A stretch of 64,000 bases of DNA from Vicugna vicugna (taxonomy: Eukaryota): assembly GCA_013265495.1 (NCBI GenBank), contig MU061578.1, forward strand, positions 3,419,308-3,483,307. Reading direction: 5' to 3'. Under the pieces are notes generated by a model. The model was not told the DNA's origin. It did not search any database and was given only the letters and a program-made list of their open reading frames with translations. Shown here in pieces: positions 11,724 to 28,909 of the stretch (positions are counted from its first letter, which is position 1; every line of letters starts with the position of its first letter). The translations under genes were made by a program, and so were the position numbers.

Positions 11724-12012
11724 NNNNNNNNNNNNNNNNNNNNNNNNNNNNNNNNNNNNNNNNNNNNNNNNNNNNNNNNNNNNNNNNNNNNNNNNNNNNN
11801 NNNNNNNNNNNNNNNNNNNNNNNNNNNNNNNNNNNNNNNNNNNNNNNNNNNNNNNNNNNNNNNNNNNNNNNNNNNNNNNNNNNNNNNNNNNNNNNNNNNN
11901 NNNNNNNNNNNNNNNNNNNNNNNNNNNNNNNNNNNNNNNNNNNNNNNNNNNNNNNNNNNNNNNNNNNNNNNNNNNNNNNNNNNNNNNNNNNNNNNNNNNN
12001 NNNNNNNNNNNN
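11724..12012. other. Assembly gap (289 N)
   Basis: Run of N adjacent to an L1. Confidence 1.
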
Positions 12013-13599
12013 TTAAATCAACTAAAACATGTCCTTGGTCTGGATGTGGGCTGGAAATGTTACTCCTGGCCACACCCCTCCCTTCTGGTTTTGGGTTACC
12101 ATCCTGAGGCCTCAGGCCAGGGTAAGGGTCAATTATGGCCCAGCTGCAGCCTCAGAGCCTTTACATTCAGTGAGGTCCATGCTGGCCTGAGGATAAGAGG
12201 CTGGAGGGGGCCTGATACCTGAGGTCGTTCTGATGTGAATCCTCCCCAGGTGTGCCCACTCCCCAAATCTCAGCATCCTGTCAGTTTGAATTGTGTTGAG
12301 GATTTGGGGTTCTGAGATGTGTAAGGTGGCCTTGACCTGGGGGAGCTGCCCCATTCCTCATTCCCCACCCAGAGGTCTCTGCCTCTCCCATTGGGCAGAA
12401 GACAGCCAAAGAGCTCCAGCGTGAGGAGAGGGGACAGAACTTTCCTGGCCTGAGGAGGGGGCTCATCTTAGGGTTAGTCTTTGGCACTTGCTGTTCAGGT
12501 GTTCTCTCTGGTGAGCAGAGTCAGCCCATGGTGTGTCCAGGTGGAAGACCTTGGCTCCACAACTGCCCCTCCACATACTGTGCTTCCTGTGCAAGGCAGG
12601 CTTGCAGTCCAGGGCTCCTCCCCCAGCTTGATATGTATGCCGTTTATAGAGGTTGAGGAACAGCCCACCTGGTAGGGATGCTCGTGCCTGACCCAGTAGG
12701 AGCTGGGGTCAGGCCCTGAAGTTACCTCAACCATCCAACCAGCTTCCCAATTCCAATGGCCAGAGATCCTCCGTTCAGGACAGGGCAGGATGCTATTTCT
12801 AGCTGCTGCGACTATCCTGAGGCCCAGCTGCATCACGGTTATGAGTGGCCCTGGTAGGGGTTGCTATGGTTGCACGTTCCCAGAGTCGGTCACTTTCCTG
12901 CCCTCCCCAAGAAGTAGGGCTTCTCATCCCCGCTGCAGTCTTGTCCGCTGGGGGCTCTTCAGCATTGTGGCCACAGGAGCGATCAGGAACCTCTAGCCTG
13001 AAGTGTGTGCTATGGGTTGGTGTCCACCCGTTGAGCAGAGGCAGCTGCAAGGACCTTCCCCCTTCCCTGCTAGTAGCCCTGTTGGCTTCAGCGCACCCTG
13101 GGGAGGGCTAGGGCCGTGTTGCCGTCTTACTAGCAGGACAGGCGAGCCTGTCTTGCAGAGAGGCGCCTTCAAGGAGCCCCTGCCTGGGGAGTCCCAGCTG
13201 TGGGCTGTTCCCTGAAAACTTCCCGGTGGGGATGGTGTCGGCGCCGCGGCCCCAGCTCGAGACCAAGGGGTGTGCGCAGTAGGGGCCTGCGAGCCGCTCA
13301 TGACTCAGTTTCCCCGCTGCGGCCTAGGGGTGCCTGCACGCAGCGCTCGCTGATCAGGGTGGAACTCGGCGACCCGCGCCCTTCTTTTGGGGGCACGTCC
13401 GAGTGGGGGGGTGCGCGTGTGGCTGGGCCGGCGGCAGCGCCGTGTGCGGCGGGGGCGGGCGGCTCCGTGACGCGGCGCTGAGCGGAGCGGGCGGAGCCGG
13501 AGGGCCGGGGCGGAGCGGAGTCGTCCGCAGAGCAGCCCCTCCCGGCCGCGGCCGCCGACCCCGGCCCCCGGTCCCCGGTCCCCGGCCCGGCCTGGCTCT

Positions 13600-15831
13600 A
13601 TGGATAGGAGCTCGCTGCTGCAGCTTATCCAGGAACAGGTGCGTGGGGGGTGGGGGTGGGGCGCCGGCACCGCCCCCGACTTGGCCTTCCGCCCTTGGGT
13701 GGGCTGTGGGGTACGGAACTCCCAGAGACCCTCAGCTCAGTCTTCTCCCTGCACGACCTTGGTCCCTTGCCTGAGACCCCAGAAAAGGGCGAGCCAGACC
13801 ACGGCGATGGGTGAAGGGCGGGAGGGAGGGTGGTTGTCCTCAGACCTTGGCCCTACCCTTCCAAGATGGGCAGGGCAGAAATGAGGTGGGGAGACAGCTG
13901 GAGAAGCTGGAGGCCTGGGTCCCAGGCACCAGTGTCCAGAGCTTCTGTGACCATGTGGGCACAGGGGCTTGGACTGAAGGTGCTTGGAACCTGCCTCTCC
14001 CAGCTGACCTGGTCCAGCCCTGTGGTCTAGGAGCTGGGCCCACCCTCAGGCCTTGGCCACTGCCCCCACCCTGCCCCAACCCCAGCAGCTGGACCCTGAA
14101 AATACAGGCTTCATCGGTGCGGACACCTTCACTGGCCTGGTGCATAGCCATGAGCTGCCCCTGGACCCTGCCAAGCTGGACATGCTGGTGGCTCTGGCCC
14201 AGAGCAACGAGCGGGGCCAGGTCTGCTACCAGGAGCTGGTGGACCTGGTCAGTGCACGGGGGCTGGGCAGCTGGGTTGGGGGCCCAGGCCTTAGCAGGCA
14301 CAGTGCCCTGGCTGGAGTGGGATGGGCAGGCGGCCCCTCCTCCCTGCCCTTCCCACTCGGGAGGGCTGTAGACGTGGGGCAGGGCCTCAGACCCTGTGAG
14401 GAAAGGGGTGGACCACTTAGGAAGGGCAGCCATGGGGGGAATATGGTGGCCTATATGCCTAGGCCCCACCCCCCCAGATCAGCAGCAAGCGCTCAAGCAG
14501 CTTCAAGCGGGCCATTGCCAACGGACAGCGGGCACTGCCCCGGGATGGGCTGCTGGACGATCCGGGCCTGGGTGTCTACAAGCGGTTTGTCCGCTACGTG
14601 GCCTACGAGATCCTGCCCCGAGAGGTGGACCGCCACTGGTACTTCTACCGGCACCGCAGCTGCCCACCCCCAGTGTTTATGGCCTCGGTCACCCTAGCTC
14701 AGGTGGGCCTGCTTGCCCACTGCCCCCACCCTGCCCTGGGGAGCCTCCATCCAGCATCCCTGGCCCTGCCTGGCCTTAATGCTTGTCGCCCTCCAGATCA
14801 TTGTGTTCCTGTGCTACGGGGCCCGTTTCAACAAGTGGGTGCTGCAGACCTACCACCCCGAGTACATGAAGAGCCCCCTTGTGTACCACCCCGGCCACCG
14901 TGCTCGAGCCTGGCGCTTCGTCACCTACATGTTCATGCATGTTGGGTGAGTGGGCTTCCCACCCCGGCACCCCTCAGATTGAATCAGGAGGGCTTGGCCC
15001 CTTGAGGTGGGAGCAGGGGGACTTCACCCTTCGTACCTGTTTGCCCCCACACAACCAGGCTAGAGCAGCTGGGGTTCAATGCGCTCCTGCAGCTGATGAT
15101 CGGGGTGCCCCTGGAGATGGTACACGGCCTGCTCCGTATCAGCCTTCTCTACCTGGCGGGTGTGCTGGCAGGTGAGGCAGGCACATGCACCCTGGGCACC
15201 TCACTGGCAGGCCTCACCTCACAGCTCTCCCCTTGCTCATACAGGTTCCTTGACCGTCTCCATTACTGACATGCGGGCCCCTGTGGTGGGGGGCTCCGGC
15301 GGGGTCTACGCCCTGTGCTCCGCACACCTGGCCAATGTCGTCATGGTAATGGGGCAGCCCCAGCGGCGGGCGGGGAGGGGTCCACAAGGCCTGCCTCGCA
15401 GCTTTTCTTATTCACGCTCTCTCAGAACTGGGCTGGGATGAGGTGTCCCTACAAGCTGCTAAGGATGGTGCTGGCCCTGGTGTGCAGTAAGTAGAGGGCC
15501 CGGGGGGTGGGCCTCAGCCTACTGCTAGGGCATATCTCACCTGCTGCCTCCCTCTGCAGTGAGCTCCGAGGTGGGCCGGGCTGTGTGGCTGCGCTTCTCC
15601 CCGCCACTGCCTGCCTCTGGCCCGCAACCGAGCTTCATGGCACACCTAGCGGGTGCAGTGGTGGGTGTCAGCATGGGCCTGACCATCCTGCGCAGCTACG
15701 AGGAGCGCCTGCGGGACCAGTGTGGCTGGTGGGTGGTGCTGCTTGCCTATGGCACGTTCCTGCTCTTCGCCATCTTCTGGAACGTCTTCGCCTATGACCT
15801 GCTGGGTGCCCATGTCCCCCCGCCACCCTGA
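13600..15831 (+). CDS. RHBDL1: Rhomboid-related intramembrane serine protease 1, complete 373-aa form, 8 exons
   Basis: Exons 13600-13638, 14086-14247, 14478-14702, 14797-14945, 15059-15171, 15245-15345, 15426-15486, 15560-15831. [21 protein letters not shown]; [10 protein letters not shown]; catalytic VVGGSGGVY and FMAHLAGA motifs; ends PPPP*. CpG island at about 13240-13700. Confidence 0.96.
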
Positions 15832-16354: not shown

Positions 16355-16360
16355 TTTATT
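16355..16360 (-). terminator. polyA signal AATAAA (minus strand) for the hidden gene
   Basis: Forward tttatt, 105 nt downstream of the ancestral TAA at 16467-16465. Confidence 0.6.
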
Positions 16361-16464
16361 GAGCTTCTGCAGCAGCCAGCCTCCTGCTCTGCCAGCCTGC
16401 TGTCCAGAGACACTTGCAGCCTAAGGTCATATGGCAGGTGAGCAGGTTCTGGGCCACAGCCAAG

Positions 16465-17739
16465 TTAGTCCGCCTGGGTCCTGCGCTTCTTGGCTGGCCT
16501 GGTGTTGTCGGGGGTGGCTGGGCTGGGACTGAGATCAGGCAGTAGATCAGGGCACAGCTTCTGCCCCATAGCCTATGTCCACAGTGCTGTCTCCACGTGG
16601 TGAGGGGTCCACAGCCCTGAGGCCCTGCCTAGGGAGGAGCGGAGGGAGTCTGGGTCTCTGGGGCCCTGGCCACCCTACCCTGCTGGATAGCTGTGCACAC
16701 TCTACCCTGACCAGGGTCCTGGATGCCCTCCCTGGCCACCATCGTCAGTCTCCTCACCTCGGCTCAGGGCTGTGGCACGCTCTTGCACCCTGCCCAAGTA
16801 CAGCAGATAGTGCTTGAGAGTGTACTGCAGGGCTGGCAAGCCAGGCACTGCGGCCACTGCCTCCTCAGACATGAAAGCGGCCACCTCGGGAGCTCCAGCA
16901 GCCAGGATCGCTGCGGGCAGTGAAGGGCCAGCATTCAGGCCCCATCAGTCCCAGGACAGACTCAGCCTGGGGCCACCCTTACCAATGATCTCGGTGTGGT
17001 GTCATGTGCGTAGCCGTTAGGCAACTTCACAGATAAGGACGCTAATAGGCCAGGTCCCGCCCTAAACCCCGCCGGCGTGCCCAGGTCTCCCGACTAACCC
17101 GAGGCAGTAGTGGGGCCCACACCCTGGAGAGCGCACAATTCCATGACCGCTGCATGCATGTCTGGCAGGAGGCGGAATCGCGGCCGAACGCTGCACCACC
17201 AGCTCCGGGGAGTTGACGGTCACGAGTTGCTGCAGGAGCGGCCGGAAAAGGCCCCTCTGTGGCCAGGTCGTGTCAGGGTTCAGGGTTGGTAGACCTCGTC
17301 GGGGTCTCGGCTCCCAGGAGGAAGCCACGCCCACGCCGCGAGGGTCCACCTCAAGGAGGAGGGCCCGCCCAGAAGGAAGTCACGCCCACGAGGCTGTGCC
17401 CCGCCCCTGGAGGAGACTCCACCCCCCACGTGGGAAGCGCCTCACTGCCAGTTTCCACGCCAGCAACTGCTCCAGGTCATCTCGTGTCACGTGCTTCTCT
17501 ACTCGGCCCTTGATGGCCGCAGGCAACTCCTCTCGATACCTGGGGAAGGGCGGTGACGGGGAGTCCGGACAAAGAAAGTCGCCCGCCCGCCCGATCCTTC
17601 CACAGCCCTACCATCTGTCCAGGGCTTCCAACCGTCCCCGAGGGCCCGCGCGCGTCCGCAGCACCTCCGGGTGGCGCTTCAGGACAGCGGCCCAGCGGCT
17701 CGGGTCCTCACAGTCCCAAAGCCCACAGGACGCCGCCAT
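16465..17739 (-). pseudogene. Unnamed 5-exon gene for an HhH DNA-glycosylase-like (Amun / zgc:112496-type) protein, with two disabling lesions
   Basis: Minus-strand exons 17739-17612, 17539-17446, 17256-17099, 16910-16758, 16628-16465, all GT-AG with matching phases. Repaired translation: MAASCGLWDCEDPSRWAAVLKRHPEVLRTRAGPRGRLEALDRWYREELPAAIKGRVEKHVTRDDLEQLLAWKLARGLFRPLLQQLVTVNSPELVVQRSAA/FRLLPDMHAAVMELCALQGVGPTTASAILAAGAPEVAAFMSEEAVAAVPGLPALQYTLKHYLLYLGRVQERATALSRGRASGLWTPHHVETALWT*AMGQKLCPDLLPDLSPSPATPDNTRPAKKRRTQAD*. Frameshift near 17178; TAG at 16575-16573. Confidence 0.85.
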
Positions 17740-18018
17740 GTCTACGCGCCGAGGCGGGGCCTCGGAGGTGCGGCGTTGGAGCACCCGGGCGGGATTCAGT
17801 CAGGACCAACTCCGGGCTTCTCAGATTTAGATGCCGCGCGTGGTGTTGTTTTGAGTGCGTACTCCCTGCCTGCCCCGCCTCCGACGTGCTTCGGGTGCAC
17901 GCGCGGCCCCGCCCGCCCCTCTGTCCCCGCCCACCCGCGCGACCGGAAGTTCCGGTGGCTGAGTGCTGGGCCGGGCCCGAGCGGATCGCGGGCTCGGGCT
18001 GCGGGCGCAGGGCGGGCC

Positions 18019-18174
18019 NNNNNNNNNNNNNNNNNNNNNNNNNNNNNNNNNNNNNNNNNNNNNNNNNNNNNNNNNNNNNNNNNNNNNNNNNNNNNNNNNN
18101 NNNNNNNNNNNNNNNNNNNNNNNNNNNNNNNNNNNNNNNNNNNNNNNNNNNNNNNNNNNNNNNNNNNNNNNNNN
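18019..18174. other. Assembly gap (156 N) covering the STUB1 start codon
   Basis: Run of N; the STUB1 frame resumes at 18175 (VGRKYPEAAACYGRAI). Confidence 1.
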
Positions 18175-20110
<1,936 letters not shown>

Positions 20111-28729: not shown

Positions 28730-28909
28730 NNNNNNNNNNNNNNNNNNNNNNNNNNNNNNNNNNNNNNNNNNNNNNNNNNNNNNNNNNNNNNNNNNNNNNN
28801 NNNNNNNNNNNNNNNNNNNNNNNNNNNNNNNNNNNNNNNNNNNNNNNNNNNNNNNNNNNNNNNNNNNNNNNNNNNNNNNNNNNNNNNNNNNNNNNNNNNN
28901 NNNNNNNNN
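28730..28909. other. Assembly gap (180 N), probably in the distal FBXL16 3' UTR
   Basis: Run of N. The flank ends in gtgttt, so the FBXL16 polyA signal (forward tttatt) may begin at the gap edge (inference). Confidence 0.95.

What the first reader, a model, noticed from the sequence alone, without database searches (positions are those of the whole stretch)
16465..17739. Hidden 5-exon HhH (DNA-glycosylase-like, Amun-type) gene head-to-head with STUB1
The ORF track shows only fragments here. Five minus-strand exons (17739-17612, 17539-17446, 17256-17099, 16910-16758, 16628-16465) splice through eight canonical GT/AG sites with consistent phases into a ~231-232 aa protein. It has a strong Kozak (GAC ATG G), an ancestral TAA and a downstream AATAAA. 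The blocks WYREELP, LLAWKLARG.FRP.LQQL, ELCALQGVGPTTASAILA, FMSEEA, QYTLKHY and WTPHHVETALW match, from my recall, the poorly characterised family of zebrafish zgc:112496, Drosophila Amun and fungal homologs. I do not know a named human or mouse protein-coding member, and I recall only a divergent lncRNA (STUB1-DT) at the syntenic human position. This would be a mammalian remnant of a putative nuclear DNA-binding or repair gene sharing a promoter with CHIP.
Basis: partly seen in the sequence, partly recalled or inferred. Interest (0 to 1): 0.9.

Follow-up and report, generated by a model that had tools for sequence, protein, structure and literature searches.

The report
Broken Amun-family gene beside STUB1
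The five exons are real and belong to the ancient Amun/zgc:112496 family of DNA-glycosylase-like proteins, but in this camelid genome the gene is a still-transcribed dead copy (a 2-base deletion and a premature stop), so this is an ordinary lineage-specific gene loss.

Summary
The spliced product is 697 nt, not a multiple of three. A 2-nt deletion in exon 3 (between 17178 and 17177) shifts the frame just before the helix-hairpin-helix. TGG>TAG at 16575-16573 removes the last 35 residues.

A family profile matches seven colinear pieces covering positions 2-238 of 239. Orthologs are intact 232-aa annotated proteins in cattle, hippo, horse and others, always between STUB1 (head-to-head) and RHBDL1. 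Fish orthologs are named zgc:112496 and arthropod ones Amun.

A confident model of the hippo ortholog has the HhH-GPD glycosylase fold. Its nearest solved structures are Ogg2-type 8-oxoguanine glycosylases (Z about 10).

The dromedary copy carries different lesions: a 2-nt deletion in exon 1 and intron-1 donor GT>AT. Camelus-type RNA shows transcription with retained introns and exon-4 skipping. So both camelid lineages lost the gene independently, and a divergent transcript from the STUB1 CpG-island promoter remains.

The gene is not hidden in other mammals and not intact here. A separate first-stage note on this window had already flagged the frameshift.

The parts
17612..17739 (-). Exon 1 (128 nt) with ATG at 17739-17737 in a GAC ATG G context. 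It is intact in the window. The dromedary copy has a 2-nt deletion here, at about 17710.
   Evidence: Family HMM positions 2-49, E 3e-5.
17446..17539 (-). Exon 2 (94 nt), encoding YREELPAAIKGRVEKHVTRDDLEQLLAWKLA.
   Evidence: HMM positions 50-84, E 8e-10.
17099..17256 (-). Exon 3 (158 nt; 160 nt in intact orthologs). It encodes the RG(K/R)FRPRL block and the HhH hairpin, and its frame is broken internally.
   Evidence: HMM positions 80-105 in frame 0 and 107-133 in frame +1.
17177..17178 (-). Lesion 1: a 2-nt deletion between these two bases. The window reads GCCGCGA--TTCCGC where orthologs read GCCGCCGC(T/C)TTCCGC. The frameshift lies about 12 codons upstream of the HhH.
   Evidence: The 61-nt stretch across it is held at share 1.00 (2 sampled words) by at least 15 samples in 7 studies of the window's species, and by a second species label.
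17103..17141 (-). Helix-hairpin-helix motif (LCALQGVGPTTAS). It carries A124T at a family-invariant position.
   Evidence: Pfam PF00633, E 0.0023, on window:17100-17177:-. Invariant columns.
16758..16910 (-). Exon 4 (153 nt), encoding the Gly/Pro loop and the FMSEEA acidic block. It is skipped in the dominant Camelus-type transcript.
   Evidence: E 2e-20; E 1e-20. Junction 16628|17099.
16465..16628 (-). Exon 5 (164 nt), with the W.PHHVETALW block, the basic PAKKRRTQAD tail and the ancestral stop position (TAA 16467-16465).
   Evidence: The intron-4 junction 16628|16758 is seen in RNA contigs.
16573..16575 (-). Lesion 2: an in-frame TAG where dromedary, cattle, hippo and horse have TGG (Trp197). 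It removes the last 35 residues, including the basic tail.
   Evidence: Camelus-type RNA reads TGG here (place 16574 T>C).
16355..16360 (-). AATAAA polyadenylation signal, conserved in all five species aligned.
17740..18018 (.). CpG-island intergenic promoter shared with STUB1. It continues into the masked N run at 18019-18174. The two start codons are about 325 bp apart in the dromedary locus.
   Evidence: GC 0.735 and CpG o/e 1.01. L001 gene table. Colinearity.
18176..20108 (+). STUB1/CHIP (context). The unmasked part starts with [16 protein letters not shown]. Its start codon lies in the N run.
   Evidence: ORF. Colinearity with the dromedary STUB1 gene call, which carries TPR, CHIP_TPR_N and U-box domains.
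13233..15828 (+). RHBDL1 (context), convergent with the pseudogene. Coordinates are approximate and come from colinearity.
   Evidence: Rhomboid gene call in L001 mapped onto the window.

Best explanation
This is a transcribed unitary pseudogene of the Amun / zgc:112496 family.

In intact orthologs the family encodes a ~232-aa protein of the HhH-GPD DNA-glycosylase superfamily. Its predicted fold is nearest to Ogg2-type 8-oxoguanine glycosylases. The protein has these features:
- an invariant WK..RG.FRP.L block;
- a GPATAS helix-hairpin-helix;
- a Gly/Pro loop followed by FM(A/S)(D/E)E;
- a basic C-terminal tail.

Intact orthologs are under purifying selection (omega about 0.25).

Shown for the window:
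- The copy keeps its CpG-island promoter shared with STUB1, all splice sites, the start codon, the stop position and the poly(A) signal.
- A 2-nt deletion shifts the frame before the HhH.
- A TGG>TAG change truncates the tail.
- The window also has substitutions at conserved positions: A124T at an invariant column, R81L at a nearly invariant one, and the camelid-stem changes E64D (invariant column) and R77L (K or R in 39 of the 40 aligned proteins).

Shown for the sister lineage (Camelus):
- It carries other lesions: a 2-nt deletion in exon 1 and intron-1 donor GT>AT.
- Its RNA retains introns 1 and 2 and mostly skips exon 4.

Inferred:
- No HhH protein can be made from the window copy.
- The coding function was lost independently in the llama/alpaca-type and camel lineages after their split.
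- What remains is a divergent promoter transcript of the STUB1-DT kind.
- In species that keep the gene, the protein is a nuclear DNA-binding enzyme or lesion binder. It has no lysine at the canonical HhH position, so if it is catalytic it would be monofunctional.
For: - Exon structure and lesions.
- Colinear HMM coverage of profile positions 2-238 of 239, on the minus strand only.
- Orthologs and their names.
- Synteny of STUB1, the gene and RHBDL1 in four other species and in the window.
- The window's exon columns projected onto the cattle, hippo and zebra loci translate to their annotated 232-aa proteins.
- Omega is 0.23-0.28 between intact pairs and 0.21 on the camelid stem. On the terminal branches it is 0.48 (3 synonymous, 4 non-synonymous) and 0.61 (3 synonymous, 5 non-synonymous).
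- Hits at conserved family columns.
- The deletion-bearing sequence is present in at least 15 samples.
- An independent short-read contig at 20x is identical over all 1601 nt.
- Camelus-type RNA shows junctions 16628|16758 and 16628|17099, and one contig runs unspliced from 17098 to 17858.
- Fold: model pLDDT 90. Ogg2 enzymes score Z 10.1-10.4, other HhH-GPD enzymes Z 5-7.3, and unrelated folds 4.9 or less. Ogg2 proteins fill the top 17 Swiss-Prot AlphaFold hits.
Against: - Alpaca protein models P0121 and P0192 read SAAAFRLL through the deletion site. At least one llama/alpaca-type genome therefore lacks the deletion, which may be species-specific or polymorphic.
- The TAG was confirmed only by one contig that may come from the assembly's own sample.
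- No RNA of the window's own species was laid: X24 gave nothing, and the other RNA runs are Camelus-type.
- Terminal-branch omega rests on 7-8 substitutions and cannot be told apart statistically from 0.25.
- The camelid-stem omega of 0.21 shows the gene was constrained for most of camelid history, so the loss is recent.
- Glycosylase activity has never been shown here for any family member. The catalytic-residue reading rests on motif spacing, not on a residue-level structural alignment.
Confidence: 0.85

Rival explanations
1. The gene is still protein-coding in this species. Either the two lesions are minor alleles or assembly errors, or alternative isoforms bypass them.
For: Alpaca models P0121 and P0192 lack the exon-3 deletion and use an alternative acceptor inside exon 5. 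All splice sites, the ATG and the poly(A) signal are intact. Omega on the camelid stem is 0.21.
Against: The deletion-bearing 31-mers are held by at least 15 samples in 7 studies. An independent 20x contig is identical to the window. The alpaca isoforms end in an out-of-frame tail that lacks the conserved C-terminal helix, so they are not intact proteins either. The window also has substitutions at the invariant position A124T and the nearly invariant position R81L. From the ATG, the frame runs into a stop in exon 4.
Confidence: 0.07
2. The locus was retained because its divergent transcript, of the STUB1-DT lncRNA type, or the act of transcribing it, regulates the shared STUB1 promoter. The protein-coding history would be irrelevant to its present role. 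This reading is not exclusive of the pseudogene reading.
For: Transcription persists in Camelus-type RNA from several tissues and studies despite the lesions. The CpG island is shared with STUB1. Splice sites and AATAAA are conserved. The hedgehog ortholog carries the symbol STUB1-DT.
Against: Bidirectional CpG-island promoters produce divergent transcripts by default. The losses are recent, so intact splice and poly(A) signals are expected without any selection. Splicing is sloppy, with retained introns and exon skipping. No functional test exists.
Confidence: 0.25
3. It is a chance arrangement of GC-rich ORF fragments with no gene behind it.
For: The region is GC-rich and full of overlapping ORFs on both strands.
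Against: Exon 4 scores E 2e-20 against 1.8 billion proteins. Seven colinear HMM hits cover the whole profile. Orthologs share the same exon-intron structure and synteny. RNA splice junctions fall at the predicted sites.
Confidence: 0.01

Closest known systems
Drosophila Amun (CG2446) and arthropod 'protein amun' orthologs
   Same: The same family. The ~200-aa N-terminal HhH domain aligns at 41% identity, E 5e-41, between the hippo ortholog and D. pseudoobscura Amun. The WK.(S/R)RGKF.P.L, GVG..(M/T)AS, FMADE and W.PH.VE.ALW blocks are shared. In the literature Amun is a nuclear protein with a glycosylase domain, a modifier of Notch signalling and a Rad50 interactor (bioRxiv 10.1101/2025.04.04.647281; PMC13076223; PMC5604405).
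   Different: Fly Amun is ~550 aa with a long low-complexity C-terminal extension. The vertebrate proteins are ~232 aa. The window copy is disrupted and cannot encode the domain.
Vertebrate zgc:112496 / mammalian 'uncharacterized protein LOC...' orthologs (e.g. Bos P0098, Hippopotamus P0100, Equus P0102, each 232 aa)
   Same: Direct orthologs. They have the same five exons, the same splice phases, the same stop position, the same AATAAA and the same position between STUB1 and RHBDL1. Read through its two lesions, the window's protein translation is roughly 85% identical to the hippo protein (nucleotide-level dN 0.07).
   Different: Those genes are intact with omega about 0.25. The window copy has a frameshift, a nonsense codon and substitutions at conserved residues.
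Ogg2-type 8-oxoguanine DNA glycosylase/AP lyases (Tm1821 3N0U, MjOgg 3KNT/3FHF, SsOgg 3FHG)
   Same: They are the nearest solved folds to the model of the intact ortholog: Z 9.6-10.4, 156-167 residues aligned across the whole ~205-aa chains. The size is the same, the architecture is the two-domain all-helical HhH-GPD type, and the HhH is followed by a Gly/Pro loop and an acidic residue.
   Different: Sequence identity is only 10-16%. PDB profile search gives no significant match. The family has Ala (GPATAS) where bifunctional HhH-GPD enzymes carry the Schiff-base lysine; this rests on my knowledge of the motif, not on a residue-level superposition. Activity is untested.
Human STUB1-DT divergent lncRNA
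   Same: The hedgehog ortholog of this protein family is annotated under the symbol STUB1-DT. The camelid copies behave like such a transcript: transcribed, poorly spliced and non-coding.
   Different: Human sequence was not examined here, so orthology of the human lncRNA to this gene is inferred and not shown.

Membership tests
Amun / zgc:112496 family | Colinear sequence similarity over the whole ~230-aa domain | tested here: met
   A family HMM built from 40 metazoan sequences hits seven minus-strand pieces in order, covering profile positions 2-238 of 239. Exon 4 alone scores E 2e-20.
Amun / zgc:112496 family | Orthologous position and gene structure: five exons, head-to-head with STUB1, tail-to-tail with RHBDL1 | tested here: met
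   Loci L001-L004 and their gene tables, the genomic alignment and window colinearity.
Amun / zgc:112496 family | Invariant residues of the family: E64, W71, K72, G76, R79, P80, L82, N89, G122-P123-A124, A126, E144, Y157, W185, H188, E191, L194, W195 | tested here: not met
   Most are kept. The window has E64D and A124T at invariant columns, R81L at a nearly invariant column, and R77L at a position that is K or R in 39 of the 40 aligned proteins.
Amun / zgc:112496 family | Uninterrupted open reading frame (a working member) | tested here: not met
   The spliced length is 697 nt. There is a 2-nt deletion in exon 3 and an in-frame TAG in exon 5.
HhH-GPD DNA glycosylase superfamily (tested on the intact ortholog) | Two-domain all-helical fold with a helix-hairpin-helix at the interface | tested here: met
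   The model has pLDDT 90.1. In a search of 48,161 chains the top 20 matches (Z 5.0-10.4) are HhH-GPD glycosylases plus the related DUF2419/queuine-salvage enzymes. Scores fall to Z 4.9 at rank 21 and to 4.4 or less for Fic-domain proteins.
HhH-GPD DNA glycosylase superfamily (tested on the intact ortholog) | HhH hairpin motif recognisable by sequence | tested here: met
   PF00633 matches 30 of 40 family members at E up to 1, with a best E of 9e-9. P0031 scores 25.8 bits against a cut-off of 24. The window piece scores E 0.0023.
HhH-GPD DNA glycosylase superfamily (tested on the intact ortholog) | Catalytic Asp about 18-20 residues after the hairpin, behind a Gly/Pro-rich loop | tested here: inconclusive
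   The family has AGAPE...FM(A/S)(D/E)E. D143 (E in cetartiodactyls and in the window) lies 19 residues after A124, and E144 is invariant. The correspondence rests on spacing only; no residue-level superposition was available.
HhH-GPD DNA glycosylase superfamily (tested on the intact ortholog) | Schiff-base lysine in the hairpin (G-x-K), which defines the bifunctional glycosylase/lyases such as Ogg2, OGG1 and EndoIII | tested here: not met
   The hairpin is the invariant G-P-A-T-A-S, with Ala at that place in all 40 sequences.
HhH-GPD DNA glycosylase superfamily (tested on the intact ortholog) | Base-excision activity on DNA | not testable with these tools
   A biochemical assay is needed. No paper reporting such an assay for this family was found.
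Expressed gene in camelids | Spliced RNA from the minus strand | tested here: inconclusive
   Camelus-type RNA contigs show the intron-4 junction and a dominant exon-3-to-exon-5 junction, with introns 1 and 2 retained. No RNA of the window's own species could be laid.

The most novel reading that the evidence does not exclude
An ancient, pan-eukaryotic, Ogg2-like member of the HhH-GPD superfamily (the Amun family) that has never been characterised biochemically is being lost repeatedly in mammals. The two living camelid lineages lost it independently. Protein models suggest decay in elephant, rhinoceros, cetaceans and a colobine monkey as well. The promoter-sharing lncRNA STUB1-DT of primates would be its relic. 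On this reading, species with and without the gene are natural knock-outs for a still unknown DNA-repair or chromatin function.
Probability: 0.5. Interest if true: 0.5.

Novelty: new member of a known kind. Interest (0 to 1): 0.35.

Why it matters
For this genome the result is a correction to annotation. The locus should be a transcribed pseudogene, not a hypothetical protein.

More broadly, the Amun family is conserved from sponges to mammals and has a clear glycosylase fold, yet no enzymatic activity has been reported for it. It is genetically tied to Notch signalling and physically to Rad50 in flies. A map of which mammals have lost it, camelids included, would give a comparative handle on what it does. 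It would also explain the origin of a lncRNA next to STUB1. The camelid case itself is a routine recent gene loss.

Tried and rejected
- **Pfam on the separate exon pieces.** Only a weak HHH hit came back.
- **The protein atlas on exon 4.** It gave only sub-threshold leads: DUF6308, Ogg-HhH and OGG.
- **PDB sequence-profile search with the family alignment.** Nothing beyond generic HhH proteins, E above 0.1.
- **Foldseek alone.** It was weak (E at least 0.05, TM 0.41-0.46). The fold assignment rests on VIA-align and on the consistency of the hit lists.
- **Laying two other DNA runs (X18, X20) and a full-length cDNA run (X24) of the window's species.** Nothing was laid. The TAG was therefore not confirmed in a second individual, and no RNA of this species was seen.
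- **Look-ups of the alpaca loci for P0121 and P0192.** Both failed with 'not on record'. Whether the alpaca reference carries the TAG is unknown.
- **Literature.** No paper holds 'zgc 112496'. One unrelated paper mentions STUB1-DT. The original Amun paper (Genetics 2009, PMC2728848) is not held, so its content is cited only through later papers.
- **The idea of a single ancestral camelid loss.** Considered and rejected: no lesion is shared, and stem omega is 0.21.
- **Assembly error as the cause of the deletion.** Rejected.
Full report
**1. What is in the sequence**

The features are as follows:
- The first segment begins with ATG at 17739, in GAC ATG G.
- The last ends with TAA at 16467-16465.
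- An AATAAA lies at 16360-16355.

The joined exons are 697 nt, which is not a multiple of three. Translation from the ATG stays in the homologous frame up to ...VVQRSAA in exon 3. The homologous sequence then continues in frame +1 (FRLLPDMHAAVMELCALQGVGPTTAS...). In that frame exon 5 reads ...ALWT*AMGQ..., with TAG at 16575-16573. The 232-aa protein therefore exists only after two repairs. This is why I rate the observation as partly confirmed.

**2. It is a real gene relic and not chance**

Exon 4 alone (50 aa) was searched against 1.84 billion representative proteins. It found 97 proteins at E up to 0.001, with a best E of 2e-20. The hits included full-length proteins of about 230-250 aa.

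I aligned 40 family members from sponge to mammals (A1) and built a profile from them. The profile hits seven pieces of the window, all on the minus strand and in order:
- exon 1: profile positions 2-49
- exon 2: 50-84
- exon 3 before the frameshift: 80-105
- exon 3 after it: 107-133
- exon 4: 128-187
- exon 5 before the TAG: 187-202
- exon 5 after it: 205-238

Nothing else in the 64 kb matches.

**3. Orthologs, names and synteny**

Full-length relatives are annotated proteins in many mammals, all as 'uncharacterized protein LOC...'. Those of 230-232 aa include Bos, Hippopotamus, Equus, Hipposideros, Pteropus, Trichechus and Castor. Moschus, Sus/Phacochoerus, Sorex, marsupials and monotremes also have annotated relatives of similar size.

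The names attached to relatives are informative:
- In fishes the gene is named zgc:112496.
- A snake transcript is labelled CG2446-PC.
- Tick, mite, insect and Drosophila orthologs are named Amun or protein amun.
- The hedgehog ortholog carries the symbol STUB1-DT.

The hippo protein aligns with D. pseudoobscura Amun at 41% identity over 181 residues, E 5e-41.

Loci fetched for dromedary, Bos indicus, hippo and plains zebra all show the same arrangement: STUB1 (TPR plus U-box) head-to-head with the gene, then RHBDL1 (Rhomboid) tail-to-tail, then RHOT2. The window is colinear with the dromedary contig at 97-98% identity. That places STUB1 at about 18065-20108 (+) and RHBDL1 at about 13233-15828 (+).

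The STUB1 start lies in the masked N run at 18019-18174, which I did not try to fill. The interval between the two genes is a CpG island with GC 0.70-0.74 and CpG o/e 0.9-1.0.

**4. The lesions, and those of the sister lineage**

I aligned the genomic sequence of the window with dromedary, cattle, hippo and zebra. The window's exon columns, projected onto the last three, translate to their annotated 232-aa proteins. This validates the exon model.

Against these species the window lacks 2 nt in exon 3. It reads GCCGCGA--TTCCGC where they read GCCGCCGC(T/C)TTCCGC. It also has TAG where all four others have TGG.

The dromedary has neither lesion but carries two of its own:
- a 2-nt deletion in exon 1, which creates TGA at codon 10;
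- a GT>AT change at the intron-1 donor.

No inactivating change is shared between the two. The start codon, all other splice sites, the stop position and AATAAA are conserved in all five species. The stop is TAA in camelids and TGA elsewhere.

**5. Are the lesions real?**

An independent short-read contig at about 20x depth (run X15) is identical to the window over all 1601 bases. It may come from the assembly's own sample.

A 61-nt stretch centred on the deletion contains 2 sampled 31-mers. It is held at share 1.00 by runs from at least 15 samples in 7 studies of the window's species, and by a second species label. The deletion is therefore a real and common allele.

There are three limits on this:
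- Two alpaca protein models (P0121, P0192) read SAAAFRLL through this site. At least one genome of the llama/alpaca group lacks the deletion, so it may be species-specific or polymorphic.
- Those models share the window's A29T and A124T and its exact out-of-frame exon-5 sequence. They differ at three other residues.
- The TAG has no confirmation beyond X15.

**6. Selection**

Nei-Gojobori estimates over 229 codons give the following:
- omega 0.23-0.28 between the intact genes;
- 0.21 on the camelid stem (30 synonymous, 17 non-synonymous changes by parsimony);
- 0.48 on the window tip (3 synonymous, 4 non-synonymous);
- 0.61 on the dromedary tip (3 synonymous, 5 non-synonymous).

The tip counts are too small for a test. 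Several tip changes fall at conserved family positions: A124T (invariant) and R81L (nearly invariant) in the window, and S127L (nearly invariant) in the dromedary. The stem carries E64D at an invariant column and R77L at a position that is K or R in 39 of the 40 aligned proteins.

My reading is that the gene was constrained through most of camelid history. It was then released and broken independently in the two lineages.

**7. Transcription**

RNA runs of a second organism hold 0.30-0.38 of the sampled words. Its differences from the window coincide with the dromedary allele at the sites I compared: 16472, 16574, 17611 and the 2-nt gap at 17709.

Their contigs show two minus-strand splice junctions (CT..AC on the plus strand):
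- 16628|17099, at higher depth, which skips exon 4.

One 789-nt contig runs unspliced from 17858 to 17098 and then joins 16627. It therefore retains introns 1 and 2 in a molecule that is spliced further downstream.

Retention of intron 1 fits the GT>AT donor. Skipping exon 4 removes the Gly/Pro loop and the acidic block. The locus is thus transcribed in camels but yields non-coding forms. No junction for introns 1, 2 or 3 was seen, and no RNA of the window's own species was obtained.

**8. What the intact protein is**

The family has no Pfam domain of its own. Members give sub-threshold to just-significant HHH/HHH_5 hits, and six of 40 give weak hits to PF21790 (OGG-like). No solved structure is found by sequence.

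An AlphaFold model of the hippo ortholog, built with the 40-sequence alignment, is confident: pLDDT 90.1, pTM 0.84, twelve helices. The structure searches gave these results:
- Among reviewed AlphaFold models the top 17 hits are all archaeal or Thermotoga 8-oxoguanine DNA glycosylase/AP lyases of the Ogg2 type.
- VIA-align on Foldseek's candidates gives Z 10.1, 9.9 and 9.6 for MjOgg and SsOgg, with 156-166 residues aligned end to end.
- A Foldseek-independent pass over 48,161 chains puts Tm1821 (3N0U) first at Z 10.4.
- It is followed only by HhH-GPD enzymes (EndoIII, OGG, Mag1, MutY, MagIII, NTHL1, AGOG, AlkA, MIG) and the related queuine-salvage enzymes, at Z 5.0-7.3. Unrelated Fic-domain proteins score 4.4 or less.
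- AlphaFold cluster representatives of 22-41% identity, some auto-named 'HhH-GPD domain-containing protein' or 'DNA glycosylase', show the family well beyond animals. The organisms behind the accessions rest on my recollection.

The motif layout follows the HhH-GPD pattern: L(K/R)xVGPATASAVLAAGAPE......FM(A/S)(D/E)E. It has an acidic residue 19 positions after the hairpin and an invariant Glu next to it. It has Ala where bifunctional enzymes carry the catalytic lysine. The comparison with the canonical motif rests on my knowledge and not on a superposition.

I infer a nuclear, DNA-binding protein that is either a monofunctional glycosylase or a non-catalytic lesion binder. The nuclear assignment comes from the basic PAKKRRTQ tail and from Amun being described as nuclear. 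This inference is untested.

The literature held here describes Amun as follows:
- a nuclear protein with a glycosylase domain that acts in Notch-dependent sensory-organ development (bioRxiv 10.1101/2025.04.04.647281, citing Shalaby et al. 2009);
- an inhibitor of Notch signalling downstream of Escargot in the gut (PMC5604405);
- a Rad50 interactor (PMC13076223).

**9. Comparison and novelty**

What does not hold is the impression of a hidden, intact gene. Orthologs are annotated in dozens of mammals. Camelid annotations already contain truncated or out-of-frame models of this locus: dromedary P0116 starts in exon 2, and alpaca P0121 and P0192 end in an out-of-frame tail. The window copy itself is dead.

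The new element is modest: two independent recent inactivations in camelids. Protein models also hint that elephant, black rhinoceros, cetaceans and a colobine monkey carry decayed copies. That hint is at model level only and was not checked in DNA.

I found no paper on the vertebrate gene or on STUB1-DT as its relic. I class this as a new member of a known kind, a unitary pseudogene of a known family, with moderate-to-low interest.

Noticed in passing
window 16528-16530 (minus strand) and ORF 16356-16463: Alpaca protein models P0121 and P0192 use an alternative acceptor (AG at 16530-16529) inside exon 5. They read an out-of-frame tail, VPAQPPPTTPGQPRSAGPRRTNLAVAQ...AEAQ, which runs past the ancestral TAA and is letter-for-letter the window's sequence. 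These are annotation products of a decaying gene, not a conserved isoform.
   Followed up: partly
Proteins P0131 (Loxodonta), P0133/P0198 (Diceros), P0111/P0114 (Delphinapterus, Delphinus), P0145 (Pygathrix); alignment A2: These mammalian models lack or garble invariant family blocks: RGRFRPRL is missing, GPATAS is altered or broken, and N-termini are replaced. This suggests further independent decay of the gene in elephant, rhinoceros, cetaceans and a primate. Hippo, ruminants, horses, bats, manatee, beaver and shrew keep a clean ~232-aa protein.
   Followed up: partly
L001:5850-7450 (dromedary), equivalent to window 17611 and about 17710: The dromedary copy has its own pair of lesions (2-nt deletion in exon 1, intron-1 donor GT>AT). 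Its public annotation avoids them with a 192-aa model that starts MAA|YREELP.
   Followed up: yes
window 16600-17858, RNA contigs of runs X1, X2, X4, X5: In Camelus-type RNA, intron 2 is retained although its GT and AG are intact. Exon 4 is skipped in the deeper junction (depth 15-23 against 4-8 for the exon 4-5 junction).
   Followed up: partly
Alignment A1, position 143 of P0100; window FMSEEA in exon 4: The acidic residue at the presumed catalytic-Asp position is Asp in over 90% of the family but Glu in cattle, hippo and camelids (FMSEEA against FMADEA/FMSDEA). One search shows the same FMSEEA in deer and warthog. The neighbouring Glu is invariant.
   Followed up: no
window 18019-18174, 11724-12012, 28730-28909: There are three N runs. 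The first covers the STUB1 start codon and most of its exon 1, so the exact spacing of the two start codons cannot be read in the window (about 325 bp in the dromedary locus).
   Followed up: no
window 17213-17830 (+), 17553-18227 (+), 17671-18309 (+): Long plus-strand ORFs of 205-224 aa lie antisense to exons 1-3 and across the promoter. They are Arg/Pro/Gly-rich, as expected of a GC-rich CpG island. They gave no family-profile match, and I take them to be compositional.
   Followed up: partly
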